A DNA stretch of 64,000 bases from IMGVR_UViG_3300008110_000030:62001-126000; one strand, 5' to 3'. Numbered from the stretch's first letter, positions 12,091-46,813 are shown. Made by a program: numbers and translations. Notes: generated by a model not told the origin, from the sequence alone.

Positions 12091-12630
12091 ATGGCAAAAT
12101 ATCTTTCAACAAAAACATACGGTAACGACCGCGGCTTATCATGCTGTTTTAGACAGTGGCGTAGTACACATAGTCACTGCTCATTACTGCACGGATATTC
12201 AATTGGTATTAAACTAGTTTTTGAATCTGAAACACTGGATACTCGAAATTGGGTCATGGACTTTGGCGGACTCAAAGCATTTAAAGAGTGGGCTGACCAC
12301 ATGTTTGATCATACTTTGGTAATTGCTGAAGATGATCCCCATCGTGCCATGTTTGAAAAGATGGCTAGTTTGGGCTTACAAGATAAAGGTGGAGTGTGTG
12401 ACGTCCGTATCGTAGAAGGTGTAGGATGTGAAAAATTCAGCGAATTAGCTTTTAAAACCATGCAAGAAATTTTGGAAACTTTCCAAAGAGGCGAAGGTTG
12501 GGAATTAAAAGACCAAACAGGCAAAACAGTAAAACTGTTTGGTGCTCGATACCCAGTTGGTTCTGATGTTAAATTACGGTCAGTAGAAGTTTTTGAACAT
12601 GCGGGCAATTCAGCAGTTTACGAAGGTTAA
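12091..12630 (+). CDS. queD: 6-pyruvoyl-tetrahydropterin synthase / QueD-like T-fold protein
   Basis: HCSLLHGY, NWVMDFGGLK, FDH, GCEKF, VEVFEH; AAGGA RBS. Confidence 0.75.
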   Translation: MAKYLSTKTYGNDRGLSCCFRQWRSTHSHCSLLHGYSIGIKLVFESETLDTRNWVMDFGGLKAFKEWADHMFDHTLVIAEDDPHRAMFEKMASLGLQDKGGVCDVRIVEGVGCEKFSELAFKTMQEILETFQRGEGWELKDQTGKTVKLFGARYPVGSDVKLRSVEVFEHAGNSAVYEG

Positions 12631-12784
12631 GAAACTTTGGCGTCTTTGGGCTAAGGCTTTGGGTGAAAAATCCGGCAGTTCGGATGAAGAAGCAGATAAA
12701 ATCGCTTGCATTCGGACTGCAATTGTGTTAACATATATTATAACAAACTTTTTTATTGTAGCAGGCGTTATAAGGCATTGGTAA
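12593..12784 (+). CDS. small membrane protein, start uncertain
   Basis: LWRLWAKALGEK...IVAGVIRHW with one TM segment; fills the gap and is TAATG-coupled to the next gene, but no clear ATG. Confidence 0.5.
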   Translation: MNMRAIQQFTKVKKLWRLWAKALGEKSGSSDEEADKIACIRTAIVLTYIITNFFIVAGVIRHW

Positions 12785-13191
12785 TGACTACTGGATTTAC
12801 ATGTTCAACATTTGATTTGTTTCACGCAGGTCACGTAATGATGCTCAAAGAAGCCAAAGAGCATTGTGATTATCTTCTTGTTGGGCTACAAACAGATCCA
12901 ACCATAGATAGACCACACAAAAACAAGCCTATCCAAACAGTATTTGAACGTTTTATACAATTAAAGGCTTGTAAGTATGTTGACGAAGTTGTAGTGTATG
13001 CTACTGAAAAAGAACTTCGAGACATATTGCTTTCTTATCCTATTAGTATTAGAATACTGGGAGAAGAATATGCTGGTAAAGAATTTACTGGCGATGATAT
13101 TGATATGGACTTTTATTTCAATCGACGAGAGCACAGTTTTTCAACAACCGAACTAAGACAGCGTGTAGTAGACGCAGAAAGTAAAAAATGA
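12784..13191 (+). CDS. cytidylyltransferase (TagD/HIGH family)
   Basis: TFDLFHAGH, KYVDEV, R..SFSTTELR; ATG at 12784. Confidence 0.85.
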   Translation: MTTGFTCSTFDLFHAGHVMMLKEAKEHCDYLLVGLQTDPTIDRPHKNKPIQTVFERFIQLKACKYVDEVVVYATEKELRDILLSYPISIRILGEEYAGKEFTGDDIDMDFYFNRREHSFSTTELRQRVVDAESKK

Positions 13192-14204
13192 TTAAGCGCA
13201 TAGGCTTTGCATGTAAGTGGATCGACACTCCTGATCAAGTAGATGGTATCAGGGCTACTGATGATTGTAAGCAATACAACACTGGTGCTACCACCATAAC
13301 TTGGTTAAATAAACAAACAAAAGAAGTTGCTGAACAAAAGCTATGGGATCTAATGGTCCAGAACTTAGAAGCGACTCGTTTGCTTGTTGAAAGGGTAGGT
13401 AAACAACATGAAAGACTCCGCATGGTTCGCCTTAGTAGCGACATTCTTCCTGCTTATACCCAGTCTGATTGGAGTTACTTTTGGAGCAAGCCTGACGTTG
13501 TCCAGTATCTTGAACGCAATTTTATCCTTATTGGGGATAGTGCTCGTGCAAGCAATACCCGTGTTTCTATGCATCCTGGTCAGTTTACTGTTCTTGCTAG
13601 TGATAATCCGGACATTGTTCGGCGAAGCATAGAGGAGTTTGAATATCATGCAGATATGGTCAGGTACATGGGCTACGGTAAACAATTTCAGGACTTTAAG
13701 ATCAACGTCCACATCTCGGGTAGAGCCGGTCCCGAAGGTATTCGAGCTGCCTACAAAAAACTTACCCCCGAAGCAAGAAATTGCATCACCATTGAAAATG
13801 AGGAAATGAGCCATGGTTTATCTACTTGCTTGTCTCTTGGTGACCTTCTTCCTATTGTACTTGATATCCATCATCATTGGATTAAAGAAGGTGAATACAT
13901 CATGCCTAATGACCCAAAAGTACAGCAAGTACTTGACAGTTGGCGTGGTCTTCGCCCTACTATGCACTATAGCGTTAGCAGGGAAGACGTGTTGGTTGGT
14001 CATTGCACACTGACTAAACCTGATCACAAGACTCTGTTAGAGTCTGGACATAAAAAACAAAAACTTAGAGCACACAGTAATTTTTATTGGAATAAAGAAG
14101 TTAATGATTGGGCTTTGACTTTTAATGACCAATTTGATATTATGTGCGAAAGCAAGGCTAAGAACCTAGCCAGCAAGGCATTGTTTGACTACAGCAATAC
14201 TTGA
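13188..14204 (+). CDS. uvsE: UV-damage endonuclease (UVDE)
   Basis: RIGFACK, RLSSD, SMHPGQF, ITIENEE, VLDIHHHW, MHYS, MCESKAK. Confidence 0.9.
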   Translation: MIKRIGFACKWIDTPDQVDGIRATDDCKQYNTGATTITWLNKQTKEVAEQKLWDLMVQNLEATRLLVERVGKQHERLRMVRLSSDILPAYTQSDWSYFWSKPDVVQYLERNFILIGDSARASNTRVSMHPGQFTVLASDNPDIVRRSIEEFEYHADMVRYMGYGKQFQDFKINVHISGRAGPEGIRAAYKKLTPEARNCITIENEEMSHGLSTCLSLGDLLPIVLDIHHHWIKEGEYIMPNDPKVQQVLDSWRGLRPTMHYSVSREDVLVGHCTLTKPDHKTLLESGHKKQKLRAHSNFYWNKEVNDWALTFNDQFDIMCESKAKNLASKALFDYSNT

Positions 14205-14274: not shown

Positions 14275-14565
14275 TTACGCAGTCTTCTTAGGCGCCCTAG
14301 GCTTAGTACCAACTTTCTTTACAGCTGGTGTCTTTGCTGGGGCTTTTGGTTTTGGAGCTGCCTTAGCTTTTGCAGGTGCCTTTGCAGGTGCCTTTGCAGG
14401 TGCCTTTTTAGTTGCTGGCTTTTTCTTAGCTGGTGCAATTGATTCAACAACTGCTTGACTAGCTTGCTCAACAACTGGTGTTGTCGCAGGTGCTTCCACT
14501 TTATATGGAACTTCTGCTGTTACCGGCTTCTCTGAACCAAATAATGATTTTAGAAATTTAATCAT
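14275..14565 (-). CDS. Lys/Ala/Pro-rich histone-H1-like small basic protein
   Basis: AAGGAG RBS on the minus strand; KKAPAKAPAKAPAK tail. Confidence 0.75.
   Translation of the reverse strand: MIKFLKSLFGSEKPVTAEVPYKVEAPATTPVVEQASQAVVESIAPAKKKPATKKAPAKAPAKAPAKAKAAPKPKAPAKTPAVKKVGTKPRAPKKTA
14369..14404. repeat. 12-bp tandem repeat, 3 copies (TTTGCAGGTGCC)
   Basis: Three exact copies; encodes (APAK)3 on the minus strand. Confidence 0.9.
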
Positions 14566-14637: not shown

Positions 14638-14666
14638 TTGACTTAAAGAGATATTGGTGCTACAAT
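14638..14666 (+). promoter_or_regulatory. sigma70-type promoter (extended -10) for the suf-like genes
   Basis: TTGACT (14638-14643), 17 bp, TACAAT (14661-14666) preceded by TGn; a TAAATA box also lies at 14610. Confidence 0.75.
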
Positions 14667-14709
14667 GTTTACTGTGGGCCAAAAACTACAAAAACAATAA
14701 GGTTCAATT

Positions 14710-15435
14710 ATGTTAAAAATTACAAATCTCTCCGTCAATTACGACGTTATTCCAATTTTGGAAGATATCAATTTAGAAATCAATGAAGGCGAAATTCACG
14801 CCATTTTAGGACCAACAGGTTCAGGCAAAAGTTCCTTAGTCAGTGTTATTGCTGGCAAATCAGATCTTAGCGTTGTCAAAGGTAAAATAAACTTTAAGAG
14901 AAAATCTTTAAACAGTTTAGATCCAAATGAAAGAAGTAAATTAGGAATTTTTACAACATTTCAGGAGCCACCTGAAATTAATGGCATTACAAATTTAAAT
15001 TTAACTAGACAAATTTTGAATGCTCGAAATGATAAAAGATCATCAACTGACGTTATTAATGATTATAAAAATTTAATAAAACAATTTGATCTAGGAAGCG
15101 AATGGTCTAATCGAGATTACAACGTAGGAGCAAGCGCAGGCGAAAAAAAGAAAAATGAAATTGTACAGTTATACATGCTCAATCCATCTCTTACAATTTT
15201 AGACGATATTGACAGTGGCTTAGACTTAGACACACTAACTGAAGTATTTAAAAGTTTAAAATCTTTCCTCTCACAAAAAGGAAAGGCAGCTATCATTATC
15301 ACACATCAACCAACGATCCTTGAAGCAATAGAGCCCACACATGTGCATGTTATCATAGATGGAAGAATCGTGGAGTCAGGTGATAAGAAAATAATTAAAA
15401 GGATCATTTCAAATGGCTATCGAGAGTTTTCTTAA
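14710..15435 (+). CDS. sufC: SufC-like ABC ATPase with degenerate signature and Walker B
   Basis: EIHAILGPTGSGKSS, FQEPPEI, SAGEKKKNEIVQ, ILDDIDSGLD, IITH, VHVIIDGRIVESG. Confidence 0.85.
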   Translation: MLKITNLSVNYDVIPILEDINLEINEGEIHAILGPTGSGKSSLVSVIAGKSDLSVVKGKINFKRKSLNSLDPNERSKLGIFTTFQEPPEINGITNLNLTRQILNARNDKRSSTDVINDYKNLIKQFDLGSEWSNRDYNVGASAGEKKKNEIVQLYMLNPSLTILDDIDSGLDLDTLTEVFKSLKSFLSQKGKAAIIITHQPTILEAIEPTHVHVIIDGRIVESGDKKIIKRIISNGYREFS

Positions 15436-16237
15436 AGTTGATTCACAAGACCCAGATTGGTCAAACAGTCCTACACAGTACTTTGGTAAAAAATTTAAGG
15501 TCATTGATGCAAATTGCTTAATGATAAAAGAAAATACTGATGACTTGATGGTTCTACGTATGAATCCAACTGAATCAGATTTGTTATGCAAAAATTTACA
15601 AGTGCTTGGAAGAGACAGTAGTAGGCTAGACTTATTCATTCTATGCGATGGATCTAAAAATACTCAACAGGTTTTTATTTACAATGTAACTGCTGAACCA
15701 AATTCAATTATTAATATTGGGATTTTTGTTAAAGACGGGAAACTTAATAAGCATATATTTGAATGTGAGCTATACGAAAACTCTGTTATTAATATCTTTG
15801 GTCTAGCAGAAAATGGGGTTGGCGGTAGCAGTGAGATTATAAGCAAAGTTTATCACGCTGGTCCTTGTGCAGAGAGCAACACGTTTGTAAACAGTATTGC
15901 TGGAAAAAATAGTCGAACTGTCTTTCAGGGTATTGTTAAAATTGAAGAAGACATGATAGACAGCGTGTCCAGTGTAACTAATACCAGTATTGTCTGTGAC
16001 GAAACTTCACAAGCATTTAGTACTCCACAAATGGTTATTGACTGTGGACAAGTACGGGCGTATCATAGTTGTGAAGTTACTACAATTGACGAACATAGTC
16101 TATGGTATTTAGAAAGCAAGGGCATTGATAAAGTCAGTGCTGAGAACTTGTTAAAAACCCTGCATCAAGATAGTGTGTTGGAACTTATTGAATATCAAGA
16201 CATTAAAGATGAACTCAAAGATTTTTTCCAAAGTTAA
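15413..16237 (+). CDS. sufD: SufD/SufB-family beta-helix protein, most like SufD
   Basis: SRTVFQGIVKI, STPQMVID..V.AYHS, LWYLESKGI; lies between sufC and sufS. Confidence 0.75.
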   Translation: MAIESFLKVDSQDPDWSNSPTQYFGKKFKVIDANCLMIKENTDDLMVLRMNPTESDLLCKNLQVLGRDSSRLDLFILCDGSKNTQQVFIYNVTAEPNSIINIGIFVKDGKLNKHIFECELYENSVINIFGLAENGVGGSSEIISKVYHAGPCAESNTFVNSIAGKNSRTVFQGIVKIEEDMIDSVSSVTNTSIVCDETSQAFSTPQMVIDCGQVRAYHSCEVTTIDEHSLWYLESKGIDKVSAENLLKTLHQDSVLELIEYQDIKDELKDFFQS

Positions 16238-17357
16238 AAGCGATTTTACTTTACCAGACAAAACATACTTAAACAGTGCATCACAAACTATAATTCCTAA
16301 TCAGGTAAAGGATTCCTACCTTGATATTTGTAATAAAATTGATGCAAGGGATGAGTATGAGTTTATTAGACAAAAAGTAAAATTATTAATTAATTCTAAA
16401 AAAGACAACGAAATAATTTTTACTCAAGGAAACAATCATGGCATAAACATGATTGCCAAGAGCATTTGTCACAAATGGCATTCAAATGATTGTGTAATTG
16501 TTCCTGAAAGTGAACACCATGCTAATTTTCTCATTTGGCAATACATGTCCATTGAATATGGTTTTAGATTTGAAACCGTAAATGTTATCAAAGATGGCAG
16601 TATGGATCTTGGTCATCTTGAAGATTTACTCAATGGCTGTGATGGTAAGATATTGTTCAGTATGAGCCATATCTCTAACAGTATTGGTTATGTACAACCT
16701 GTTAAAAGTATATTTGATAAAGTCAAAGAATATGACGGGATAACTTTGCTAGATGCAAGTTTAAGCATTGGCAGAGAAACAATAGACGTGCAAGATTTCA
16801 ATATTGATTTTTTAACATTTACTGGACATAAATTTTATGGTCCAACGGGTGTTGGCATGTTATACGGGAAACAAAAGTATTTAGACAAGTTAGAACCTAC
16901 TATATTAGGTGATAGCAATAGTACACTACTCCCTTGGAAATTAGAAATTGGCAAACCCAACATTGCAGGGGTAGTAATGTTAGGTTCAGCAATTGACTGG
17001 TTCACTTCATATGATTTAGAAAGTTTTAAAGTTCATGACAAACTTATGAATGCAAACTTTCAAATGATGTTGAATGACCTTGACTTCATAGAAATATTCC
17101 ACCCAGGTTACTATAAAGGTGGCTTAATTGGCTTCAACGTACATGGCCACCATCCTGCTTATGTAGGAGAATTTTTACTTAACGAAGGAATTGTATTAAA
17201 ATATGGTCATTTAAATGCAAGACCAATTGTAGAAGAAAAATTCCCAAATGGAATACTTAGATTGAGTTGGGCTTGCTACAATACTAAAGATGATGTTGAA
17301 CATTTAAAACAGGGTCTTGTAAAATTCTACGATAAATACAATTCTAAAAGGACATAA
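16209..17357 (+). CDS. sufS: SufS-like class-V PLP enzyme lacking the catalytic Cys
   Basis: YLNSAS, EIIFT, SEHHAN, SHISN, FTGHKFYGPTGVG (PLP Lys present); KYGHLNA replaces RxGHHCA. Confidence 0.8.
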   Translation: MNSKIFSKVKSDFTLPDKTYLNSASQTIIPNQVKDSYLDICNKIDARDEYEFIRQKVKLLINSKKDNEIIFTQGNNHGINMIAKSICHKWHSNDCVIVPESEHHANFLIWQYMSIEYGFRFETVNVIKDGSMDLGHLEDLLNGCDGKILFSMSHISNSIGYVQPVKSIFDKVKEYDGITLLDASLSIGRETIDVQDFNIDFLTFTGHKFYGPTGVGMLYGKQKYLDKLEPTILGDSNSTLLPWKLEIGKPNIAGVVMLGSAIDWFTSYDLESFKVHDKLMNANFQMMLNDLDFIEIFHPGYYKGGLIGFNVHGHHPAYVGEFLLNEGIVLKYGHLNARPIVEEKFPNGILRLSWACYNTKDDVEHLKQGLVKFYDKYNSKRT

Positions 17358-17360
17358 AAT

Positions 17361-17747
17361 ATGGCATATTCAGACAAAGTAATCGATCATTACGAGAATC
17401 CTCGCAACGTTGGTAGCTTTGACAAGAACGATACCGATGTTGGCACTGGCATGGTTGGTGCACCTGCTTGCGGTGATGTAATGAAACTACAGATAAAGGT
17501 AGACAATGATACAGGTATTATTACAGATGCAAAATTTAAAACGTATGGCTGCGGATCGGCTATCGCGAGCTCGAGTCTCGTTACAGAATGGCTCAAAGGA
17601 AAAACTCTCGACGAAGCAGGAACAATCAAAAACTCCGAAATCGCCACAGAACTAGCATTACCCCCAGTAAAGATACACTGTAGTATTCTAGCAGAAGATG
17701 CTATTAAGGCGGCTGTAAATGATTACCGTAACCGACACAGCACGTAA
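17361..17747 (+). CDS. iscU: Fe-S scaffold IscU
   Basis: MAYSDKVIDHYENPRNVGS, APACGD, YGCGSAIASS, LPPVKIHCS; all three Cys present; TAAATA at 17333. Confidence 0.97.
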   Translation: MAYSDKVIDHYENPRNVGSFDKNDTDVGTGMVGAPACGDVMKLQIKVDNDTGIITDAKFKTYGCGSAIASSSLVTEWLKGKTLDEAGTIKNSEIATELALPPVKIHCSILAEDAIKAAVNDYRNRHST

Positions 17748-18045
17748 GAGAATTAAACAGAATTTAGAAAAACGCGGCAAAGGCGTGGGTATTCGCATAG
17801 GTGTAAAAACCACAGGCTGTAGTGGATTGGCCTATACTATCGAATATGTGGATGAATACACTGCTGAACCTGGAGTCACTAATTTTGGTCAACCAGAATT
17901 TATTGTGCTGGTCGATGCCAAGAGTTTGGCTTATCTAAATGGTTTAACAATGGATTGGGTTCGCAACGGACTTAATGAAGGATTTGATTTTATTAATCCC
18001 AATGAGCGTGACCGCTGTGGATGTGGTGAAAGTTTTAGAGTTTAA
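17719..18045 (+). CDS. iscA: A-type Fe-S carrier IscA
   Basis: TTGCSGLAY, F.NPN...CGCGESF. Confidence 0.95.
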   Translation: MITVTDTARKRIKQNLEKRGKGVGIRIGVKTTGCSGLAYTIEYVDEYTAEPGVTNFGQPEFIVLVDAKSLAYLNGLTMDWVRNGLNEGFDFINPNERDRCGCGESFRV

Positions 18046-18329
18046 ATCTTACCAATTGGCAATGTACTGCTAACTGGCATATCCCAAATTTTTCTTTTAG
18101 TAATGCCCATTCGTTGGGCAAATTTTTTGACGTCACATTCTCCGCAAACATGAAAATATTTGTTGCTGAGTCTTTTGGGGTCTATCTTAGCATGATCCCT
18201 TGTAAAATCCCTGTCACAATTGTCACATCGAAAAACATTAATTGTTTTTGTTCTAGTATAATGATGTTCTTTGCCTAATTTACTGCTTCGAACATAATTA
18301 GAAATTTCTTTAAAGGATCGTATGAACAT
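18042..18329 (-). CDS. small Zn-finger-like protein
   Basis: CDNC and HVCGEC; TAAATA 5 nt before the ATG on the minus strand. Confidence 0.65.
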   Translation of the reverse strand: MFIRSFKEISNYVRSSKLGKEHHYTRTKTINVFRCDNCDRDFTRDHAKIDPKRLSNKYFHVCGECDVKKFAQRMGITKRKIWDMPVSSTLPIGKI

Positions 18330-18370: not shown

Positions 18371-18410
18371 AAGTGGACAGTTGGTATATCACCCAAATTT
18401 GGAGTTAATA

Positions 18411-21400
18411 ATGGCAAGAAAAGACGTTAATATTGGTTTAACAGGTAACGATGGAACAGGTGACAGCATACGTGATGCGTTTTCCAAAGTTAATGCAAAT
18501 TTCCAAGAACTTTACGCTAGTCAAGGTCTAGAGGCCGGACTAACATTTGATAACTTAGTTGACGTTATCAAACCACTAAGACCTAACACAGTTTTAGGCT
18601 TAGACAGTTTAGGAAAAACGATTGTTAGTAGAGATTTAGAAGCGGCTATTGGTATCAGTATTGATACAGCTACTGATCCATCTAAAATAATCTTTAGTAT
18701 TGCTAACGTTCAAATTCGACAAGACCCAACTCCTACGCTGTCAAACGTATTAGACGGAAGTGGTTTTAAATTAAGTTTTATTGGTGATCCTGAAAATGAC
18801 CAAGATGCTGTTACTAGAAAATGGGTTTATCAGAATTTCTTAAACAGAGACAATATTGACAAGTTGGGCACCTTTGATCTTGCTGCCGGCAGTGTCATGC
18901 GTCAGAACTTCAAAATTAGTCCTACTCCAGATAACGGCAACGTTAATGCTGGTACAAAAATTATTAGCGTTGTTGGATCTGACGGTGTTACTCCAAAGAA
19001 TGATGTTTTCTTAAAATTCCAAGCAACGCACCCTGCTCATGCAACACGTAAAGAATATGTAGATACTAAACTTTCTTTACAGGGAACTAACACACTAGAT
19101 CCAGCAACTGGCTTTGTAAACAAGGGCATGGGCGTGATGACTGGTCCATTAATATTAAATGACCACCCTGGTGACTATGTTGGTATCAATCGTCTTCCAG
19201 ACGGAACACTATTTGTACAAGAAGATTACAGAGCAGTTACTAAAGGATATGTAGATTCTAAGTCATATTCTAGTAGTGGTAATTTGTATGTTAGTACAAA
19301 AGGTAATGATGATATTTGGGATTTTGACAACGATCGTCCAAATCCAATCTATGGTTATCCAGAAGAAGAAATTGGTCGCAGTTGGAGTAAAGCATTTAAA
19401 TCATTGAATGCCGCATGTCGCTATGCAACTCGAATTATAGACACTGTTGAATTACAAAATACACCATACCAAGTTACGCCACAACAAATTACTCGTTGGG
19501 CTCCGCCATTTACAACTCCAATTACAAGCCCAAGAACTCGTGTGCGTGTAAGTTTACAAAATCATGGATTTCAAGATGGAGATTACGTTTTAGTTAGTGG
19601 AGCTATCTTAGGATCACTGGACACAAGAAATTTAAATGGTATCCATAGAGTTAATGCTTTAGATGTTAATAACTTTGAATTAAATTTAAAATCATTAGTA
19701 ACATGGCCAAATCCAGAAGTTGCTCCTGGCGGAACTATTAGCATTTCATTAGCTAACAAAAAGGATGGTCCTTACAGTATAACTTCTAAAGTCGATTTTG
19801 GATTTAGAGGATTCTTTGTACCAAAACCTGAAATTACTATTATGGTTGAGTCAGGTGTATATTTTGAAGAAGCTCCAATTTTTGTCCCACCTAACTGTGC
19901 TATTAAGGGTGACGAATTTAGACGTACATTAGTTAAACCAAAACCAGGTCCAGTTGACCCTGTTAAATCTCAACAGCTCAAGTTTGTTCGAGGCGACCGA
20001 AGCCAAAGTGCTACCTTTTGGTATAACACTCACTACTACCACCAACTTGCTAGATCAGTTGGAACTACTAACGTAGTTGGTAGTACAAAATTAGAAATTA
20101 AAAATAGTCCTTATAGACCAAAGAGTGGTATGAGGTTTATTGTAGGAACCGTTGGTGGAATACCTAATGTCTACAGAGTTGGGCGTGAAGTTAATATTGT
20201 TTACAAAGACCCAAATCCAGATTTAAACATTGCTCCAGGAACATATATTATGGACATTGTTGACGACAACGGTGATCCAAAACCACTAGCAACTGGTATC
20301 CCAGATTCATCAACAATTGAATTCTTGTTAGACAACGAGCACTGCGATGCATTATTGGTTGCTGATGCATTCCAATTGCGTAACCTAACACTTATTGGAT
20401 TCAAAGGCTTTGCTATGTCTTTTGATCCAAATAGACAAATCAAAACACGTTCTCCATATGCACAAGTTGGCGCTGTATTTGCTGGGGAAGGCGGTGGTGG
20501 TCAATTGGTTGACGGTATGTCTGGTAACCAAGTTTGCTACGTTCAAGACACTAGCTATACAGATCCGTTCACTGGTACACAAGGTTCTAGTGGTCTCAAA
20601 ATGACTGTTACTGGTCTTGTGCGTACTCCTGAAACTCCAAACACATTTTTCTTAGCTAAGAAAAAGTATGTCATTATTGATTCAACAACTCCAGATGCTA
20701 ATGGAACTGCTACATTAACATTGAGTACTACTACTCCAATTGAACTTGATGATACTTATTTGCCAGCAGGATTTATTCCAAACGGTTCTCAGATTTTAAT
20801 TGAAACTGCTGGTAATAGATCTATGTTGTCTAATGACTTTACCATGATCAACGATTTAGGTTATGGTCTAGTTTGTGAAAACAACGGTGTTGCAGAAGCA
20901 GTTAGTCAATTTACATACTATTGCCGTGCCAGCTATTTGTCTAGATCAGGCGGTCAAATTCGTTCTGTAACAGGCTCAAGTTGTTATGGTATTGTTGGTT
21001 TACAATCTGAAGGTAGCGATCCTAACGAAGCTATTCAAATTGGTAGAGTTAAAACTGACATTGGTAACATCATGCAAGTGTATATTGATGATCCAGATGC
21101 AGATGGTAACCAAGGTGCTGTAAATTTAGTAATGGGCGGCTTGGCTAGCAAGCCTATAAGAAATGCCACATTCAAACTGACCAAACATGAAGTTATTATT
21201 AAAAATATTGCTAGAGCAAGATTGCCAGGTGGGACATTAACTAATGGTCCTCTAGTAGTAACTACATATTATCCTCACCCTTTCTCAACTGGAGAAAGTG
21301 TACAAATGACCAGTGTTCGAGGATTGCAATTGCCTGCAATTCCTCCAAGTACTACTCCTAGAACAACTGATGTTGACGGCAGAGTTTACACAATTACCTC

Positions 21401-24400
21401 TATCAGTGACCATACCTTTACGTTAGATGGTTCTGAGAGTACTAACTATATCAATGATTTAGGAACTTATAATTTTGCTGACTTGCCGGCTCGCGCTATA
21501 TCCAATTTAGTAATTGGGGCACAAGACGTTGTATTCTCAATTAAAGGTGATCCAAGCCCATCTAATATTACAGGTAGAGCAAGGTTTGATGGAATTCCTG
21601 GTGAAAACCAAGCTGGTCAAAACGTACTAAAACTTCAACGTCTACAACGTCCAGCTGTTGTTGGAATGAAAACAACTATACCTGGCGGTGTACTGACCTA
21701 CACTGTAACTGGTGTTACTGAAAAAACGGTCACATTCAAACCTTCTCCAAGACCAACTCCTACTGGTGATAATGATAATAAAATTGGCGCACAGACCATT
21801 TATATCTATACCACTACAGACATTACAACAGGTGCTATTAGTGGTACTACTCTTACTGCTACTAATCTAGATCAAAATAATGTTGGTCAATTGGTCACAG
21901 GCGACACTGTAGCTGCCAACACTTATATTATTGAAGTTACCAGTCCAACAACTGCAACAGTTTCAATTAGTCAAAGTGTTACTAATAGAACTTTAGAATT
22001 AAGTTGGGTGCCTAAGATAGGTTGGAGTTTCCAACATTTAGACACCAACATGGGTCTACAGTTAACTTATACAAGATATACAATTACTGATACCCCAGTT
22101 TATGATGCAGTGTCAAACAGATGGGCTGTGACATTAGATACTCCTCTAACAGTTAACATGCAAAATCAAGAGGCAACTGGTCAGACTACCATCGTTGATG
22201 GCATATGGGACGTTACTTTAAATTATGATTTAGAAGTGAGTATCGTTAATAGTGTGACTCCTGTGTCATTTACATTTGTTGATTCATATTGGGTTACAAG
22301 TATTGATCCATCGCTGACTAACCCAATACCTACAGTCACTGATGCATATAATAGGACTCGTGCTCGTAAAATAAACTTGTATCAACAAAAGACAATTAGT
22401 GTAAGTCAAATTTTAAACAGACCTGCTATTATTAACAGTTCCGCCTTAAGATTTTCAGCTTCAAATTATGATCCAAGTATATACCGTATTTTAGGTAAGA
22501 CATCTGATGGCGGCATTACTCAAGACAAATACGCTGTTACTACAACAATAAATCCATTAAGTGGTCTCAACACCAATGCTGTACAAAAAGTATCAGATAA
22601 CAAAATTTGGATACAATCTGAAGTTATTGATTATTTGGCCACAATTTATCCTAACTTCCAATATAACATCAACACATGCTTCCGTGACGTTGGGTACATT
22701 ATTGATGCCGTTCTTTATGACTTGACCTATGGTGGTAACGTAAGAAGTCGTGCCGCTGGTATTAGTTATTATCAGCAAGGTAATCCAAGTGCGGCTCTTG
22801 TATTGAGTCAGCAAAAAATAGAAACTATTGATGCAATTAATTTTGCCACCACTGCGGCAATTACTGCACTGAATCAATACAGTGGTGCAACTATACCACA
22901 ACTACAACTACCATATCGTGGAAGCAATTTAAATGGTGTTGCACAAATACAAGCAAATAAATTATTTGTACAAGATGAAGTTATTGCATTTTTAGCACAA
23001 ACATACCCATCTTTACAATTTAATCAAACTACTTGCCGTAGAGACGTTGGTTTAATTCTTGATGCTGTTGCCTATGACTTAGAATATGGTGGTAACGTAG
23101 CAACTAGAACGGCTGCTCTAGCATATTATGACGGTTCAACAAGTTCACAATATGTGTTGTCTAATCAAAAAACACAAACCATTGCTGCCGTTAATAGAGC
23201 ATCAACTGTTGTTCAACAGATTGTTTTAGAAACAACTGTGACTGCAACAGCTGGAAATACATCAACGCAAAACACTGCTGGAACTCCTGGAGTTGCTGGG
23301 GTCGACAACGTACGAGTTCAAGAATTAATGAACATTATAACCAATGTTCTACAGAACGGTACTTCAGTTGCTCCTGTTAGAAATTTAGGTATTAGAAGAA
23401 GTTACCAAGATCCTTTAAGTATAGATTACGTTGCACAAGATATTGACAGTGGCATTGTAGCTGAAGCTGGAGCGGCAACTGCTTTACAAGCCTTAATGGA
23501 TCAAATTGTAGCAATAATTCAATTTGGTGCTACTGGCCCTCATGTTATTGTTCAACCACAAGTGTTGGACACACTACAAGCAATTGACTTCCCACCAACT
23601 GCAACATCACTACAATATGGTGCAGTATTAACTGGTATAGGAATTCCTAGAGCAGGAGTAGGTGGCGTAACTGAAGATACATTTATTAGAACTGTAACGC
23701 AGTTGTTTGACGAAAATCAAAATACAATTGGCTATAGAGCTAGAATTAGTGCTCCAGTCACACAAGCGATTCCTGCTGGTACAGAGATTACTATTACTGG
23801 TCCAGGCAGTGACTTCTTATTTGACCTAAACACCCCACTAGACCTTAGACACTTAGCTGGAGATGTAATTGGTATTACTACTACATTCTCAACAGTACGT
23901 GCAACTGGACATGATTTCTTAAACGTTGGTGCAGGTGGTTATGATGATTCTAACTATCCTAACAACGTTTATGGTCAACCAGTTAATACACCATCTGATA
24001 GTGCAATTGCCACAGAAGTTGGAACAGGTCGTGTGTTCCACGTGTCCACTGATCAAAATGGTAACTTTAGAGTAGGTAGTTTCTTTAACGTTAACCAAGG
24101 CGACGGCTCTGTTAGTATTAGTGCTAAGATTGGTCTAAGTGCTGTTACAAGTTTAAGTTTCTTAACTGGTGCAACTGTTAACCAATTCTCAACTGATTCT
24201 AAATTAGACGACAACAGTGATAACATTGTTTCAACACAGAAAGCAATGAAGACCTACATCAATAACTTGATTGATGGTCGCTTTACAATTGATAACACTG
24301 ATACTCCACAACGAGGTCTATTAAGACTTGACGGTGAGAGCATTATGGTTGGCGATTTAGACATTGGTTTAAACAGTGTTGAACGTATAGTAAACAGTCC

Positions 24401-26942
24401 AAACAATGACGGTGCTGTCAATAGAAAATATGTAGATAATGTATTTGCAGGCGGAACTATTAATTATGATGGTTCTTATGAAATTGAAACAACTGGCAGT
24501 AGAACAAATGTATTAGCATTTACTATGATAACCGACAACACTTCAGTTGGCGGTGTTCCAAATAATAAGGGCGGAATTGATCTTAACAATAATAAGATAG
24601 TAAGTCTGAAAGCTCCAACTGAGTTGACAGATGCTGCCAATAGAGCTTATGTTGATCAGACCATTGCCACAGGCGGTGTAAGAACAGGTTGGACTGGATT
24701 CACACTTTCTAATACTACTATAAGAAATACTGTATCTAGTATCAGTATGGTAAACAACGGTGGCGGTTATCTTGTTCCACCAGTGGTTGTAATTTACTCT
24801 ACTAGTGGTACTGGTGCTGCCGCAAGAGCAGTTCTTACTGCTGGAAGTGGTGCAAGAAGTGTTAACAACATTATTGTTGACAGTGGCGGGTATGGTTACA
24901 CTGAAGCCCCAATGATTATTATTGGCGGCAGTGTGTCAAATGTAAACGTAAACAGTTCTGGATCAGGGTATAGCAGTGCCCCAACATTGACCTTTAGTGC
25001 TCCTCCAACTGGTGGTATTAGAGCTACTGGTTATGCTGTTATGCAAGGAAGCGGATCAAATCAAATTATTAGTAGCATTGTAATTACTAATGCAGGTGCG
25101 GGCTATACACTTGCACCAACTATTGCGCAATCTGGCGGTGGTTCACCTACTGTGACTGCAATTATTACTGCTGTTTTACAACCAGGATCAGGCGCAACAG
25201 CTACCGCAGGTATTACTGCTACTCTAAGAAATATTGATTTAAATGGTAACAAGGTAACTGGCTCTGCTGATCCAACACAAAATACAGATTTAGTAACTTT
25301 AAATTATTTTAATACTAAAAACTTTATTGGCGAAATTGCTGACGTAACTATAACCAATGTTCCTGCAAGTGGTGATTTATTAGTATTCACAGGTACTGTA
25401 CCAGCAGGAAGTAAAGGTGCTATGGTCAACGTGGCAGTTGATTCAAGTAGTGATATTTCGTTTGTAAGAAGTGCTAATACAATTGCTGTTAATATTAAAG
25501 ACAATGCTATTATTGATAGCAACATTGCTCCTAATGCCGCAATTCAACAAACTAAATTATTGTTGAGTCGAGCAAATTCAGTTACTGAAGGCGCTGTACC
25601 TGGTGTTGGTGATTTTGGTATATCGTCATTTAATGCTACTGAATTTATCAGTGATAATGGTTTAATTAAACTACGTCAGTCAGAAAGTAAAAATACTGGT
25701 GTTCGTTTAGATAGAATGCAACAGATCACTAATTATCGAATACTAGGAAGATACAATGTTACTGAAGGTGAAACTTCAGTTGGCCCTATTACTGAAGTCC
25801 CGGTAACAGATTTAAAACAATTACTAGGATTGAGTGCCGCAACTGTTCAAGTTCTTATTAGTGATGACATTTTAGGTGGTAAACAAGTTGATAGTGGCAA
25901 TCCACTAAATCCATTACTTGCTACCAACTGGAATGGTAGTGCATCGTTTGGTGCGCTATTAAGACGTGGCGGATCAATGATTGGTAAAATAGTCATGACT
26001 GATGCTGGGGGATTGCCAGCAGGTGATGCAAATATTACTCCAATTATTGGTGTTGGCGCCGGCCTCACTGACAAGTTAGACATTGGTACAAGCTCATTAA
26101 GATTTAGAAACGTATTCTCTAAGAATCACTATGGTGACGTATTTGAAGGTGCAACATTTGGTAGTGCTAGTGCCCCGACAACACAAGGTAGTGGAGCAAC
26201 ATTTAATGGAACTGCTACATTTGCTGGAAGTTCTGGAGCATTACAATTTGCGTTGGTTGCAGGTGGAGATATTGCTCTTAGAAATGGCGCAAATAATGTA
26301 AACTTTAATGGAAGTCAACAAGTTACTGTCAGTGTGCTAGCAGAAAGTGGTACTGTAAACAACAGTCTTGTAAGAAGAACTAGTGATGGTCAAATTAATG
26401 CAAGTCAGTTTAATGGTCCGTTAAATGGGTTGGCTACAAATGCAACTAACTTGCGTTTAGGAACTACTGATTATCCAGCAAGTGACAGTGCAAGTAGCAC
26501 TTCAGTTCCGTTACGTATTAACGGAGTAATAAAGGCTACTACTTTTGAAGGTAAAGCAACCAGTGCCAACTATGCTGACTTAGCTGAAAATTATCAAGCT
26601 GACTTTGCATATGAGCCTGGTACTGTACTTGAATTTGGTGGCGCTCACGAAGTTACTGTTGCACAAGATGAAACTAGAAAGGTAGCAGGGGTTGTATCAA
26701 CAAGACCAGCACATTTAATGAATACTGAACTACAAGGTGAAAATGTTGTAGCACTTGCACTACAAGGGCGTGTTCCATGTAAAGTACGTGGTAAGATTAG
26801 TAAAGGCGACCTAATGGTTAGTGCCGGAGGTGGTTATGCTCGTCCAACACACGATCCAAAAATTGGAACAATTATTGGAAAAGCGTTAGAAGACTTTGAT
26901 GGTGTTGAAGGTGTCATTGAAGTGGTTGTTGGAAGATTGTAA
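18411..26942 (+). CDS. giant baseplate/tail-fiber protein (~2843 aa)
   Basis: GGAG RBS before ATG 18411; N-terminal NIG..NDGTGD..R.AF.KVN.NF (T4 gp9/gp10-like); DAxxKxYVD fiber repeats; GxGY..aPt repeats; C-terminal ADLAENY...GRVPCKV.G...GD...IGKAL chaperone-like domain. Confidence 0.85.
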   Translation: MARKDVNIGLTGNDGTGDSIRDAFSKVNANFQELYASQGLEAGLTFDNLVDVIKPLRPNTVLGLDSLGKTIVSRDLEAAIGISIDTATDPSKIIFSIANVQIRQDPTPTLSNVLDGSGFKLSFIGDPENDQDAVTRKWVYQNFLNRDNIDKLGTFDLAAGSVMRQNFKISPTPDNGNVNAGTKIISVVGSDGVTPKNDVFLKFQATHPAHATRKEYVDTKLSLQGTNTLDPATGFVNKGMGVMTGPLILNDHPGDYVGINRLPDGTLFVQEDYRAVTKGYVDSKSYSSSGNLYVSTKGNDDIWDFDNDRPNPIYGYPEEEIGRSWSKAFKSLNAACRYATRIIDTVELQNTPYQVTPQQITRWAPPFTTPITSPRTRVRVSLQNHGFQDGDYVLVSGAILGSLDTRNLNGIHRVNALDVNNFELNLKSLVTWPNPEVAPGGTISISLANKKDGPYSITSKVDFGFRGFFVPKPEITIMVESGVYFEEAPIFVPPNCAIKGDEFRRTLVKPKPGPVDPVKSQQLKFVRGDRSQSATFWYNTHYYHQLARSVGTTNVVGSTKLEIKNSPYRPKSGMRFIVGTVGGIPNVYRVGREVNIVYKDPNPDLNIAPGTYIMDIVDDNGDPKPLATGIPDSSTIEFLLDNEHCDALLVADAFQLRNLTLIGFKGFAMSFDPNRQIKTRSPYAQVGAVFAGEGGGGQLVDGMSGNQVCYVQDTSYTDPFTGTQGSSGLKMTVTGLVRTPETPNTFFLAKKKYVIIDSTTPDANGTATLTLSTTTPIELDDTYLPAGFIPNGSQILIETAGNRSMLSNDFTMINDLGYGLVCENNGVAEAVSQFTYYCRASYLSRSGGQIRSVTGSSCYGIVGLQSEGSDPNEAIQIGRVKTDIGNIMQVYIDDPDADGNQGAVNLVMGGLASKPIRNATFKLTKHEVIIKNIARARLPGGTLTNGPLVVTTYYPHPFSTGESVQMTSVRGLQLPAIPPSTTPRTTDVDGRVYTITSISDHTFTLDGSESTNYINDLGTYNFADLPARAISNLVIGAQDVVFSIKGDPSPSNITGRARFDGIPGENQAGQNVLKLQRLQRPAVVGMKTTIPGGVLTYTVTGVTEKTVTFKPSPRPTPTGDNDNKIGAQTIYIYTTTDITTGAISGTTLTATNLDQNNVGQLVTGDTVAANTYIIEVTSPTTATVSISQSVTNRTLELSWVPKIGWSFQHLDTNMGLQLTYTRYTITDTPVYDAVSNRWAVTLDTPLTVNMQNQEATGQTTIVDGIWDVTLNYDLEVSIVNSVTPVSFTFVDSYWVTSIDPSLTNPIPTVTDAYNRTRARKINLYQQKTISVSQILNRPAIINSSALRFSASNYDPSIYRILGKTSDGGITQDKYAVTTTINPLSGLNTNAVQKVSDNKIWIQSEVIDYLATIYPNFQYNINTCFRDVGYIIDAVLYDLTYGGNVRSRAAGISYYQQGNPSAALVLSQQKIETIDAINFATTAAITALNQYSGATIPQLQLPYRGSNLNGVAQIQANKLFVQDEVIAFLAQTYPSLQFNQTTCRRDVGLILDAVAYDLEYGGNVATRTAALAYYDGSTSSQYVLSNQKTQTIAAVNRASTVVQQIVLETTVTATAGNTSTQNTAGTPGVAGVDNVRVQELMNIITNVLQNGTSVAPVRNLGIRRSYQDPLSIDYVAQDIDSGIVAEAGAATALQALMDQIVAIIQFGATGPHVIVQPQVLDTLQAIDFPPTATSLQYGAVLTGIGIPRAGVGGVTEDTFIRTVTQLFDENQNTIGYRARISAPVTQAIPAGTEITITGPGSDFLFDLNTPLDLRHLAGDVIGITTTFSTVRATGHDFLNVGAGGYDDSNYPNNVYGQPVNTPSDSAIATEVGTGRVFHVSTDQNGNFRVGSFFNVNQGDGSVSISAKIGLSAVTSLSFLTGATVNQFSTDSKLDDNSDNIVSTQKAMKTYINNLIDGRFTIDNTDTPQRGLLRLDGESIMVGDLDIGLNSVERIVNSPNNDGAVNRKYVDNVFAGGTINYDGSYEIETTGSRTNVLAFTMITDNTSVGGVPNNKGGIDLNNNKIVSLKAPTELTDAANRAYVDQTIATGGVRTGWTGFTLSNTTIRNTVSSISMVNNGGGYLVPPVVVIYSTSGTGAAARAVLTAGSGARSVNNIIVDSGGYGYTEAPMIIIGGSVSNVNVNSSGSGYSSAPTLTFSAPPTGGIRATGYAVMQGSGSNQIISSIVITNAGAGYTLAPTIAQSGGGSPTVTAIITAVLQPGSGATATAGITATLRNIDLNGNKVTGSADPTQNTDLVTLNYFNTKNFIGEIADVTITNVPASGDLLVFTGTVPAGSKGAMVNVAVDSSSDISFVRSANTIAVNIKDNAIIDSNIAPNAAIQQTKLLLSRANSVTEGAVPGVGDFGISSFNATEFISDNGLIKLRQSESKNTGVRLDRMQQITNYRILGRYNVTEGETSVGPITEVPVTDLKQLLGLSAATVQVLISDDILGGKQVDSGNPLNPLLATNWNGSASFGALLRRGGSMIGKIVMTDAGGLPAGDANITPIIGVGAGLTDKLDIGTSSLRFRNVFSKNHYGDVFEGATFGSASAPTTQGSGATFNGTATFAGSSGALQFALVAGGDIALRNGANNVNFNGSQQVTVSVLAESGTVNNSLVRRTSDGQINASQFNGPLNGLATNATNLRLGTTDYPASDSASSTSVPLRINGVIKATTFEGKATSANYADLAENYQADFAYEPGTVLEFGGAHEVTVAQDETRKVAGVVSTRPAHLMNTELQGENVVALALQGRVPCKVRGKISKGDLMVSAGGGYARPTHDPKIGTIIGKALEDFDGVEGVIEVVVGRL

Positions 26943-26979
26943 GATATCCTAAAATAAATAAGATAAACAGGAACGAAAA

Positions 26980-30399: not shown

Positions 30400-30402
30400 A
30401 CT

Positions 30403-46300: not shown

Positions 46301-46813
46301 ATGGTAAAACTTGTATTTCATCCAGATCCAATATTAGAAGAACAAATGCCAGCATTTGATTTTGATAATCCTATTATGGATCCAAAAGAATTAGAAAAAG
46401 AATTACTAGCAATTATGTTTGCCAATAATGGAATTGGACTTGCGAGTCCACAAATTGGCATTAAAACTAGAGTATTTGCAATGGGACATTCACTCATGCC
46501 TGAAGCAAGTCTTGCTATGTTTAATCCAACAGTAATTGACGCTAGTAACGAATTTCAAGATATAGAAGAAGGCTGTTTAAGTTTTCCAAATATTTTTGCT
46601 AAAATTAAAAGACCTACTTGGATTGTTGTAAAATACAATACTAGTGATAATGAAGAACGAACTGAACGAATGGAAGGTTACAACTGTAAATGTTTTTTAC
46701 ATGAATTGGACCACTTAGATGGTATCGTAATGAAAGATCGTTTAAGTCAACTTAAATGGGCGTTAGCCGTTAAAAAATCAAAAAAGGTAAAAAATTATGC
46801 TAGAACCAAATGA
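46301..46813 (+). CDS. def: peptide deformylase
   Basis: GIGLASPQ, EGCLS, HELDH. Confidence 0.95.
   Translation: MVKLVFHPDPILEEQMPAFDFDNPIMDPKELEKELLAIMFANNGIGLASPQIGIKTRVFAMGHSLMPEASLAMFNPTVIDASNEFQDIEEGCLSFPNIFAKIKRPTWIVVKYNTSDNEERTERMEGYNCKCFLHELDHLDGIVMKDRLSQLKWALAVKKSKKVKNYARTK

What the first reader, a model, noticed from the sequence alone, without database searches (positions are those of the whole stretch)
14638..18045. Two-layer SUF plus ISC locus in a phage, with no sufB in the window
Seen: sufC, sufD-like and sufS-like are very divergent and lie behind a sigma70-type promoter. They are followed by near-canonical iscU and iscA with all Cys ligands and the HscA-binding LPPVK motif, and iscU has its own TAAATA box (17333). 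No sufB, sufE, iscS or hscAB is present in this window. Known: SufB is the essential scaffold subunit, and IscU normally depends on IscS and HscAB. Inference: two acquisitions of different age and timing. The SUF-like proteins could interfere with host SufBCD while phage IscU/IscA redirect host-made clusters to phage clients.
Basis: partly seen in the sequence, partly recalled or inferred. Interest (0 to 1): 0.65.

Follow-up and report, generated by a model that had tools for sequence, protein, structure and literature searches.

The report
Eroded phage SUF operon plus iscU-iscA
A large T4-like phage carries the worn-down remains of a complete iron-sulfur (SUF) assembly operon: the scaffold gene sufB is deleted, SufC and SufS have lost key catalytic residues yet are still conserved, and an intact, separately mobile iscU-iscA cassette sits beside them.

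Summary
Five overlapping genes (sufC-like, a 274-aa sufD-like, sufS-like, iscU, iscA) lie behind a conserved sigma70-type promoter. No sufB, sufE, hscB, Fer2 ferredoxin or second desulfurase is found in the 214-kb record.

Three findings change the picture:
- Related phages carry a complete sufB-C-D-S-E-T-A operon at the same site. The window lineage nests among them, and a 36-nt scar made of the sufB start and end lies between the promoter and sufC. So sufB was deleted.
- The window's SufS has Asn in place of the catalytic Cys and lacks the HRGxH segment and a hairpin. Its SufC has Asp in place of the catalytic Glu. Even so, dN/dS is about 0.05, the same as neighbouring genes.
- More than 20 further phage lineages, including near-complete 328- and 353-kb genomes, keep only SufC-like plus SufD-like, always with a degenerate ABC signature motif.

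The iscU-iscA cassette has its own history: 75% and 69% DNA identity between sister phages whose flanks are 87–95% identical. Its closest copies lie in other phages beside nrdAB.

The 274-aa protein is a short SufD, not SmsB. The record also encodes at least five radical-SAM proteins, which are likely clients. What the non-catalytic SUF remnant does is not known.

The parts
14638..14666 (+). sigma70-type promoter, TTGACT-17 nt-TACAAT with an extended -10 TG
   Evidence: 10 of 12 matches. TTGAC and TAxAAT are invariant in the alignment with L013 and L016 (upstream of sufC) and with L021 and L019 (upstream of sufB).
14674..14709 (+). 36-nt scar of the deleted sufB: remains of its start (GTGGGCCA, compare ATGGACCA in L021) and of its last codons (AAGGTTCAAT, compare GAAGGTTCAATAGGATAATG in L021)
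   Evidence: Sequences; alignment.
14710..15435 (+). SufC-like ABC ATPase, 241 aa. Walker A and the H-loop are kept. The Walker B catalytic Glu is Asp (ILDDID). The signature reads SAGE instead of SGGE. The protein contains no cysteine.
   Evidence: dN/dS 0.058 against L013.
15413..16237 (+). Short SufD, 274 aa: beta-helix core plus a C-terminal helical domain that binds SufC in the solved homologues. The N-terminal domain of bacterial SufD is missing.
   Evidence: AF2 model with pLDDT 91. Foldseek TM 0.81 to SufD in 5awf and rmsd 2.0 A to 2zu0_A. dN/dS 0.048.
16209..17357 (+). SufS-like PLP-fold protein, 382 aa from the ATG that relatives also use (an upstream GTG lies at 16173). The PLP Lys and EHHAN are kept. 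The catalytic Cys is Asn (GHLNA), AAQS has become ASLS, and the HRGxH segment and a 9-10-aa hairpin are deleted.
   Evidence: dN/dS 0.051.
17333..17338 (+). TAAATA, a T4-type late-promoter-like box 28 nt before iscU
   Evidence: The motif is about tenfold enriched upstream of ORFs in this genome.
17361..17747 (+). IscU scaffold, 128 aa, canonical: three Cys, Asp, His and LPPVK
   Evidence: Part of a cassette exchanged among phages.
17719..18045 (+). IscA, an A-type carrier of 108 aa with three Cys; overlaps iscU by 29 nt
   Evidence: The same overlap is seen in L136 and L137.
18042..18329 (-). Conserved convergent neighbour, a 95-aa protein with CxxC...CxxC. It marks the downstream border of the variable part of the locus in most relatives.
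   Evidence: No Pfam or PHROG match.

Best explanation
The locus is a reduced descendant of a phage-borne SUF operon (sufB-C-D-S-E-T-A) that sits between uvdE and a giant fibre gene in a clade of T4-like jumbo phages.

**Shown**
- In the window's lineage sufB was deleted, leaving its promoter and a 36-nt scar.
- sufE and sufT are gone.
- SufS lost its persulfide-forming Cys and the segments specific to desulfuration.
- SufC lost its catalytic Glu.
- SufC, SufD and SufS nevertheless stay under purifying selection as strong as that on neighbouring genes.
- An intact iscU-iscA cassette, exchanged among phages, occupies the downstream end.

**Inferred**
- The productive Fe-S function of this phage rests on IscU and IscA. 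They would draw sulfur and chaperone help from the host (IscS, HscBA) and feed the phage's own radical-SAM enzymes, partly from a late promoter.
- The SufC/SufD/SufS remnant acts without catalysis of its own. Most likely SufD and SufC form a half-complex that docks onto host SUF parts (SufB-SufC).
- An ABC dimer made of one canonical host SufC and one phage SufC with a single spoiled motif would still have one competent ATP site.
For: **An ancestral complete operon**
- Complete operons with canonical motifs lie at the same site in L015, L019, L020 and L021/L009.
- Phage SufB is monophyletic, with topology (L020,(L019,(L021,L015))).
- In the SufD tree the window falls inside the clade whose basal members carry the full operon (98/99 and 99/97 support).
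- The promoter is conserved and a sufB scar is present.

**Catalytic losses**
- Cys to Asn in SufS and Glu to Asp in SufC.

**Continued selection**
- Window against L013, dN/dS: SufC 0.058, SufD 0.048, SufS 0.051, UvdE 0.046, fibre 0.054.
- L134 and L135 have the same architecture with a fully dead SufS (no Lys, no Cys). That ORF is still intact, with dN/dS 0.20.
- Twenty non-redundant lineages with only SufC and SufD all have a degenerate signature motif, while Walker A and mostly Walker B are kept. They include genomes 92% and 99% complete with no SufB, SufS or IscU.

**A separately mobile isc cassette**
-.

**Likely clients**
- Six radical-SAM domain hits, five of them supported by NCBIfam, lie in the same record.

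**Published precedent**
- T4-like marine viral genomes with IscU or A-type carriers plus many radical-SAM genes are described in PMC5332604.
Against: - No experiment or interaction test supports any partner for the SUF remnant.
- The host is unknown, so it is not known whether it has ISC, SUF or both.
- The record is about 61% complete. A sufB, iscS or hscBA could lie in the missing part.
- One near-complete phage with only SufC and SufD has no radical-SAM gene (G006), so the pair is not tied to phage clients.
- Different lineages spoil different SufC motifs, and some spoil all of them (L134, L016). This fits a role independent of ATP better than a hybrid ATPase.
- dS is near saturation in the more distant comparisons.
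Confidence: 0.6

Rival explanations
1. Interference. The catalytically spoiled SufC, SufD and SufS act as dominant-negative decoys. They poison host SufBC2D and SufS/SufE, while phage IscU and IscA capture iron and sulfur for phage enzymes.
For: Catalytic residues are lost while the proteins stay under purifying selection. The SufD motif that contacts SufC in the solved homologues (LWYLQSRG: Y232 and G237 invariant, R236 in at least 90%) is conserved.
Against: Close relatives carry a complete, canonical operon whose evident purpose is to build clusters, so a switch from helper to inhibitor would be needed. Most phages with only SufC and SufD have no IscU to take over. Nothing was tested.
Confidence: 0.17
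2. Decay. sufC, sufD and sufS are functionless leftovers on the way to loss, and only iscU-iscA matters.
For: A graded series of degeneration is seen in SufS and SufC across lineages. L007 has lost the isc genes, and the lineages with only SufC and SufD have lost sufS altogether.
Against: dN/dS of about 0.05 equals that of neighbouring genes. Full-length ORFs persist down to 32-40% identity in dozens of lineages. No frameshifts or stops were seen.
Confidence: 0.08
3. New chemistry. The Cys-less SufS is still a PLP enzyme that works without a persulfide, for example as a selenocysteine lyase or cysteine sulfinate desulfinase. From my own knowledge, Cys-to-Ala mutants of E. coli CsdB keep these activities. 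Or it uses a Cys of IscU in trans.
For: The PLP Lys, EHHAN, Asp and the carboxylate-binding Arg are kept in the window clade (P0047-P0054). The gene lies directly before iscU.
Against: Sister lineages with the same gene order have also lost the PLP Lys (L016, L134, L135, P0055, P0056). The HRGxH segment at the active site is deleted. The one complex prediction gave no verdict.
Confidence: 0.1
4. Minimal self-sufficient scaffold. The phage SufC and the 274-aa protein build clusters on their own, as archaeal SmsCB does.
For: The two-gene set without a desulfurase resembles SMS in content.
Against: The family profile matches SufD (4e-22) far better than SufB (8e-12) or SmsB MJ0034 (1.5e-4), and the fold is closest to SufD. 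In SMS the cluster sits on three Cys of SmsC, including a C-terminal CxxC (PMC12192291). The window SufC has no Cys at all, and the SufD family has no invariant Cys. The ABC signature is degenerate where sufB is absent.
Confidence: 0.03

Closest known systems
Bacterial SUF system (SufBC2D scaffold, SufS/SufE sulfur donor, SufT, SufA), with the operon order sufBCDSE-sufT seen in the Bacteroidota loci fetched here
   Same: Relatives of this phage carry the same genes in the same order. The window keeps SufC, SufD and SufS homologues, and its SufD model superposes on E. coli SufD.
   Different: sufB, sufE and sufT are absent from the window. SufD is 274 aa against 410-490 aa in the bacterial loci. 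SufS lacks its catalytic Cys and SufC its catalytic Glu. Phage SufC is only 38-45% identical to bacterial SufC, while phage SufB is 66-71% identical to bacterial SufB.
E. coli SufC2D2 complex (PDB 2ZU0)
   Same: It is a known SufC-SufD assembly without SufB. The phage pair has the matching folds and keeps the conserved C-terminal SufD motif that contacts SufC in the solved complex.
   Different: Its physiological role is unsettled even in E. coli. The phage SufC has spoiled ATPase motifs, and the phage SufD lacks the N-terminal domain.
IscU and A-type-carrier auxiliary genes of T4-like marine viral genomes (Nishimura et al. 2017, PMC5332604)
   Same: T4-like phages carrying IscU and/or an A-type carrier together with several radical-SAM genes. 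The IscU is of the gammaproteobacterial type.
   Different: That work does not describe sufB, C, D or S in phages. It does not describe a degenerate SufC/SufD/SufS module or cassette exchange of iscU-iscA.
Archaeal SMS (SmsC2B2)
   Same: A two-component ABC ATPase plus beta-helix protein, without a desulfurase.
   Different: See the membership test. The cluster-binding Cys of SmsC are absent, and the 274-aa protein is closer to SufD in both sequence and fold.
Heterodimeric ABC proteins with one degenerate ATP site (for example TAP1/TAP2; from my own knowledge)
   Same: One partner has a spoiled signature with intact Walker motifs (the phages with only SufC and SufD). Or it has a spoiled catalytic Glu with a near-intact signature (the window).
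   Different: This is an analogy only. No heterodimer of phage and host SufC has been shown.

Membership tests
SufC (Fe-S assembly ABC ATPase) | Equivalog HMM TIGR01978 above its cut-off | tested here: met
   253.2 bits against a cut-off of 212.8.
SufC (Fe-S assembly ABC ATPase) | Catalytic Glu after Walker B, and the SGGE signature | tested here: not met
   ILDDIDSGLD against E. coli ILDESDSGLD, and ASAGE against FSGGE. Walker A Lys, Q-loop and H-loop are present.
SufD | SUFBD core beta-helix plus the C-terminal helical domain that binds SufC | tested here: met
   PF01458 at 94.9 bits. Profile against PDB SufD gives 4e-22. AF2 model pLDDT 91, TM 0.81 to 5awf_B and rmsd 2.0 A to 2zu0_A.
SufD | Full-length equivalog (TIGR01981 cut-off) including the N-terminal domain | tested here: not met
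   99.8 bits against 222. The alignment covers only E. coli SufD residues 246-409. The bacterial SufD fetched here are 410-490 aa.
SufB scaffold | Equivalog HMM TIGR01980 above its cut-off | tested here: not met
   57 bits against 346, the only hit in the record. True phage SufB in L019 scores 600 bits.
SMS (SmsC2B2) | Cluster-binding Cys of SmsC (C218 plus a C-terminal CxxC) | tested here: not met
   The window SufC has no Cys and no C-terminal extension. The feature is defined in PMC12192291.
SMS (SmsC2B2) | The beta-helix subunit groups with SmsB rather than with SufD or SufB | tested here: not met
   SmsB MJ0034 scores E 1.5e-4 against SufD 4e-22. TM 0.57 against 0.81.
SufS (type II cysteine desulfurase) | PLP-binding Lys in a class-V aminotransferase fold | tested here: met
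   PF00266 at 258 bits. HK aligned with B. subtilis SufS K224.
SufS (type II cysteine desulfurase) | Persulfide-forming Cys in the GHHCA loop | tested here: not met
   GHLNA aligned with GHHCA of 5j8q. The residue is Asn in P0047-P0054, whereas canonical phage SufS have FLCAQP. TIGR01979 scores 267 bits against a cut-off of 475.
IscU | Equivalog HMM, three Cys, Asp, His, and the LPPVK motif that binds HscA | tested here: met
   TIGR01999 224.8 bits against 192.4. The alignment to 1q48 and 2l4x shows all of these residues.
IscU | Works with IscS and HscBA | not testable with these tools
   No such genes are in the record. The only Hsp70 is DnaK. The host is unknown.
IscA / A-type carrier | Three conserved Cys (C-x63-C-G-C) and a family HMM match | tested here: met
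   TIGR00049 100.6 bits against 58.8. The IscA equivalog scores 132.9 bits, below its cut-off of 150.6. The Cys residues align with E. coli IscA.

The most novel reading that the evidence does not exclude
A clade of T4-like jumbo phages keeps a catalytically spoiled SufC-SufD pair, and in some lineages a SufS pseudoenzyme as well, as a dedicated module that plugs into the host's SUF machinery. The result would be a hybrid of host SufB and SufC with phage SufC and SufD, having one competent and one degenerate ATP site. If so, the phage takes over control of host Fe-S assembly rather than bringing its own. This would be a viral pseudoenzyme module aimed at cofactor biogenesis.
Probability: 0.2. 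Interest if true: 0.78.

Novelty: new variant of a known kind. Interest (0 to 1): 0.62.

Why it matters
Phage genes for Fe-S assembly have so far been reported mainly as single helpers: IscU, A-type carriers and SufE.

**What is added here**
- Some phages carry a whole SUF operon.
- A graded series of natural reductions runs from the whole operon down to a two-gene SufC-SufD core.
- That core has lost ATPase motifs yet has been kept through deep divergence.

**What the series offers**
- It is a natural experiment on which SUF parts can be dispensed with or repurposed.
- It gives a handle on the long-unclear role of SufD and of the SufC2D2 complex.
- It gives a clear case of enzymes turning into conserved pseudoenzymes in a virus.

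**A warning for annotation.** A "cysteine desulfurase" or "SufC" label in viral auxiliary-gene surveys may hide proteins that cannot catalyse the named reaction.

Tried and rejected
- **SufS-IscU complex.** Complex prediction with two copies of the window SufS-like protein plus IscU gave no verdict (score 0.00). It counts neither for nor against binding.
- **Sequencing runs.** I did not try another route.
- **Cultured phages.** GenBank phages hold no close relative of the 274-aa protein. Only weak hits at 23-24% identity appeared, to sufD-like stretches in Staphylococcus and Microcystis phage records. The DNA search found only iscU/iscA similarity.
- **Donor of the phage SUF genes.** Phage SufB is 66-71% identical to SufB from many phyla and falls in an unresolved part of the tree. 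The gene order matches the Bacteroidota loci, but that is not proof of origin.
- **Host of the phage.** The closest IscU relatives are unnamed metagenomic sequences, and the ones looked up are phage contigs. The window has no tRNA gene.
- **Literature.** Searches for phage sufB, sufC or sufD found nothing specific.
- **Link to radical-SAM genes.** I looked for a link between the SufC-SufD pair and phage radical-SAM genes and rejected it. G008 has 11 and G006 has none.
- **First SufB tree.** It wrongly included four SufD-like rows (L007, L023, L025, L027). Only the four true SufB rows were interpreted.
Full report
**What is there.** The window is bases 62,001-126,000 of a 214,617-bp IMG/VR virus record, about 61% complete by CheckV. 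RIIA and other T4-type genes mark it as a large T4-like phage. Five overlapping plus-strand genes lie between uvdE (13188-14204) and a convergent 95-aa gene followed by a 2,853-aa fibre-like gene:

| Gene | Coordinates | Length |
|---|---|---|
| sufC-like | 14710-15435 | 241 aa |
| SUFBD-core protein | 15413-16237 | 274 aa |
| sufS-like | 16209-17357 (ATG start shared with relatives; GTG at 16173 possible) | 382 aa |
| iscU | 17361-17747 | 128 aa |
| iscA | 17719-18045 | 108 aa |

Family scans confirm the names.
- SufC passes its equivalog cut-off.
- The SufD-like and SufS-like proteins fall far below theirs.
- IscU passes, and is about 82% identical to the E. coli and Haemophilus proteins with every ligand and LPPVK in place.
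- IscA has its three Cys.

- Aligned with B. subtilis SufS, the phage protein reads GHLNA where the enzyme has GHHCA. The persulfide-forming Cys is therefore Asn, while the PLP Lys is kept.
- Against canonical phage relatives it also lacks the HRGxH segment and a 9-10-residue hairpin, and AAQS has become ASLS.
- SufC has ILDDID where E. coli has ILDESD, so the catalytic Glu is Asp. Its signature reads SAGE instead of SGGE.

**The locus in relatives.** Searches of IMG/VR with the 274-aa protein and then with its family alignment gave 37 loci with the same flanks. Two more came from JGI contigs. They fall into five types:

| Type | Loci | Gene content |
|---|---|---|
| a | L015, L019, L020, L021 (=L009) | Complete sufB-C-D-S-E-T-A operon. 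All SufC and SufS motifs canonical, SufS Cys included. |
| b | Window, L013/14, L134, L135 | sufC-D-S-iscU-iscA. In L134/L135 SufS has also lost the PLP Lys and SufC has spoiled Walker B, signature and H-loop motifs. |
| c | L016-18 | As type b, with an extra ErpA-like carrier and a SufS with no catalytic residues left. |
| d | L007 | Degenerate sufC, then sufD and a Cys-less sufS, with no isc genes. |
| e | 24 loci (20 non-redundant) | Only sufC-like and sufD-like. |

In type e the ABC signature is degenerate in every case, while the Walker A Lys and usually Walker B D-E are kept. Two type-e genomes are 92% and 99% complete (328 and 353 kb). They have no SufB, no class-V aminotransferase and no IscU anywhere.

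**Direction of change.**
- The four phage SufB proteins form one clade with topology (L020,(L019,(L021,L015))).
- In a careful SufD tree rooted on bacterial SufD, all phage SufD form one clade (100/100).
- The window falls inside a sub-clade (98/99) whose two earliest branches, L020 and L019, and also L015/L021, carry the full operon.
- The promoter TTGAC-17-TAxAAT is conserved. It stands before sufB in L021 and L019, and before sufC in the window, L013 and L016.
- Between it and the sufC start the window has 36 nt. These begin GTGGGCCA (L021 sufB start: ATGGACCA) and end AAGGTTCAAT (L021 sufB end: GAAGGTTCAATAGGATAATG, whose ATG starts sufC).

So sufB was removed by an internal deletion. Whether the lineages with only SufC and SufD lost the other genes or never had them is not settled.

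**Not decaying junk.** The Cys-less SufS, the Asp-bearing SufC and SufD are constrained like ordinary genes:

| Comparison | SufC | SufD | SufS | UvdE | Fibre | IscU |
|---|---|---|---|---|---|---|
| Window vs L013 (dS 0.3-0.8) | 0.058 | 0.048 | 0.051 | 0.046 | 0.054 | not estimated (dS saturated) |
| L134 vs L135 (dS near saturation) | 0.30 | 0.10 | 0.20 | 0.14 | not computed | 0.025 |

In the L134/L135 pair, where SufS has lost every catalytic residue, the values are looser but still well below 1. Full-length ORFs persist down to 32-40% identity. SufD is the best-kept member.

**What the 274-aa protein is.**
- The family profile matches PDB SufD at 4e-22, SufB at 8e-12 and SmsB MJ0034 at 1.5e-4.
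- The AlphaFold model (pLDDT 91) is a beta-helix with three C-terminal helices.
- It superposes best on SufD in SufBC2D and in SufC2D2 (TM 0.81; rmsd 2.0 A over 229 columns). The match to SmsB is TM 0.57.
- The family has no invariant Cys, and the His aligned with E. coli SufD H360 is not conserved.
- In SMS the cluster sits on three Cys of SmsC (PMC12192291). The window SufC has no Cys.

It is therefore a short SufD, not a self-sufficient SmsB-type scaffold.

**The isc cassette.**
- Between the window and L013 the flanks are 87-95% identical in DNA, but iscU is 74.6% and iscA 69% identical. Synonymous sites are saturated for iscU and far above the flanking genes for iscA (dS 1.85).
- The window's iscU is closer (84-87% DNA, 94-96% protein) to copies in other large phage contigs (L136 at 330 kb, L137 at 87 kb).
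- In those contigs iscU-iscA has the same 29-nt overlap but lies beside nrdA, nrdB, grx and Hc1.

The cassette therefore moves among phages on its own.

**Expression signals.** TAAATA at 17333 lies 28 nt before iscU. In this genome 40 of 228 ORFs have the motif within 60 nt upstream, against 3.9 expected, and many of them read ATAAATA. A late promoter for iscUA in addition to the early-type promoter before sufC is therefore a reasonable inference.

**Rest of the genome.**
- At least five radical-SAM proteins cluster at C1:6.6-21 kb: two B12-binding methyltransferase-like, two SPASM-type and one viperin/MoaA-like. They are likely Fe-S clients.
- The record has DnaK (999 bits to the DnaK model, not HscA), IbpA and ClpS.
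- It has no HscB, Fer2 ferredoxin, SufE or second desulfurase.
- Published marine T4-like viral genomes with IscU or A-type carriers also hold many radical-SAM genes (PMC5332604). That half of the finding is therefore a known kind.
- I found no description of phage sufB, C, D or S, or of the degenerate pair.

**Mechanism.** The evolutionary account is well supported. The functional account is inference:
- IscU and IscA look fully competent. They must rely on a host desulfurase and chaperones.
- The SUF remnant cannot mobilise sulfur, and it lacks the subunit of the canonical SUF complex that scaffolds the cluster. Selection nonetheless keeps it.
- SufC motifs are canonical only where phage sufB is present, so the retained role does not need a full phage ATPase cycle.
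- My preferred reading is a phage SufD-SufC half-complex that docks on host SufB-SufC. With one spoiled motif per phage SufC, one ATP site of such a dimer would remain competent.
- Interference with host SUF, a new PLP chemistry for SufS, and slow decay are the rivals.
- The single complex prediction I ran (SufS-like dimer with IscU) gave no verdict. Read data could not be obtained.

Noticed in passing
G000:C1:6610-21042 (outside the window, minus strand): A cluster with six radical-SAM domain hits: two about 540-aa B12-binding KedN5-like methyltransferases, two rSAM/SPASM proteins and a viperin/MoaA-like protein, among other genes. The product of the pathway is unknown. Related phages hold between 0 and 11 such genes.
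   Followed up: partly
G000:C1:39562-42309 (outside the window): The phage encodes a full-length DnaK (999 bits), an IbpA-like small heat-shock protein and ClpS side by side. An ATP-dependent protease (PHROG 4871) lies at window 46797-49079.
   Followed up: partly
window 14275-14565 (-): A 96-aa protein rich in Lys, Ala and Pro (AKAPAKAPAK repeats), histone-H1/Hc1-like in composition. It is conserved upstream of the suf locus in relatives. An Hc1-family gene also precedes iscU in L136 and L137.
   Followed up: no
window 12091-14204: A PTPS/QueD-like gene, a cytidylyltransferase and the UV endonuclease UvdE precede the locus. UvdE is 62-73% identical across the more distant members of the phage clade and is a good marker for it.
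   Followed up: partly
window 18381-34644, and G000:C1:154590-168833 and 203788-213933: A run of very large ORFs (2,853, 1,139 and 1,413 aa in the window; 4,747 and 3,381 aa elsewhere). They are presumably fibre or structural proteins. The first one always follows the suf locus.
   Followed up: no
whole record G000: TAAATA is rare overall (135 sites on both strands of 214 kb) but stands within 60 nt upstream of 40 of 228 ORFs, often as ATAAATA. This is a T4-type late-promoter signal that could be used to map late genes.
   Followed up: partly
L136:9657-9893 and L137:9845-10075: The large phage contigs that carry the closest iscU-iscA cassette also encode a ribosomal protein S21 homologue.
   Followed up: no
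L016:9369-9698: One related lineage has a third carrier, ErpA-like (109 aa), in front of iscU-iscA. L134 has an unrelated 108-aa hydrophobic ORF between iscU and its A-type carrier.
   Followed up: no
window 18104-18120 (+): A terminator-like hairpin with a T run lies 59 nt after the iscA stop, inside the 3' end of the convergent 95-aa gene. It may end the operon.
   Followed up: no
L054-L133 against L021: Phage SufB is 66-71% identical to bacterial SufB, but phage SufC from the same operon is only 38-45% identical to bacterial SufC. This is an unusual mismatch in rates that I could not explain.
   Followed up: partly
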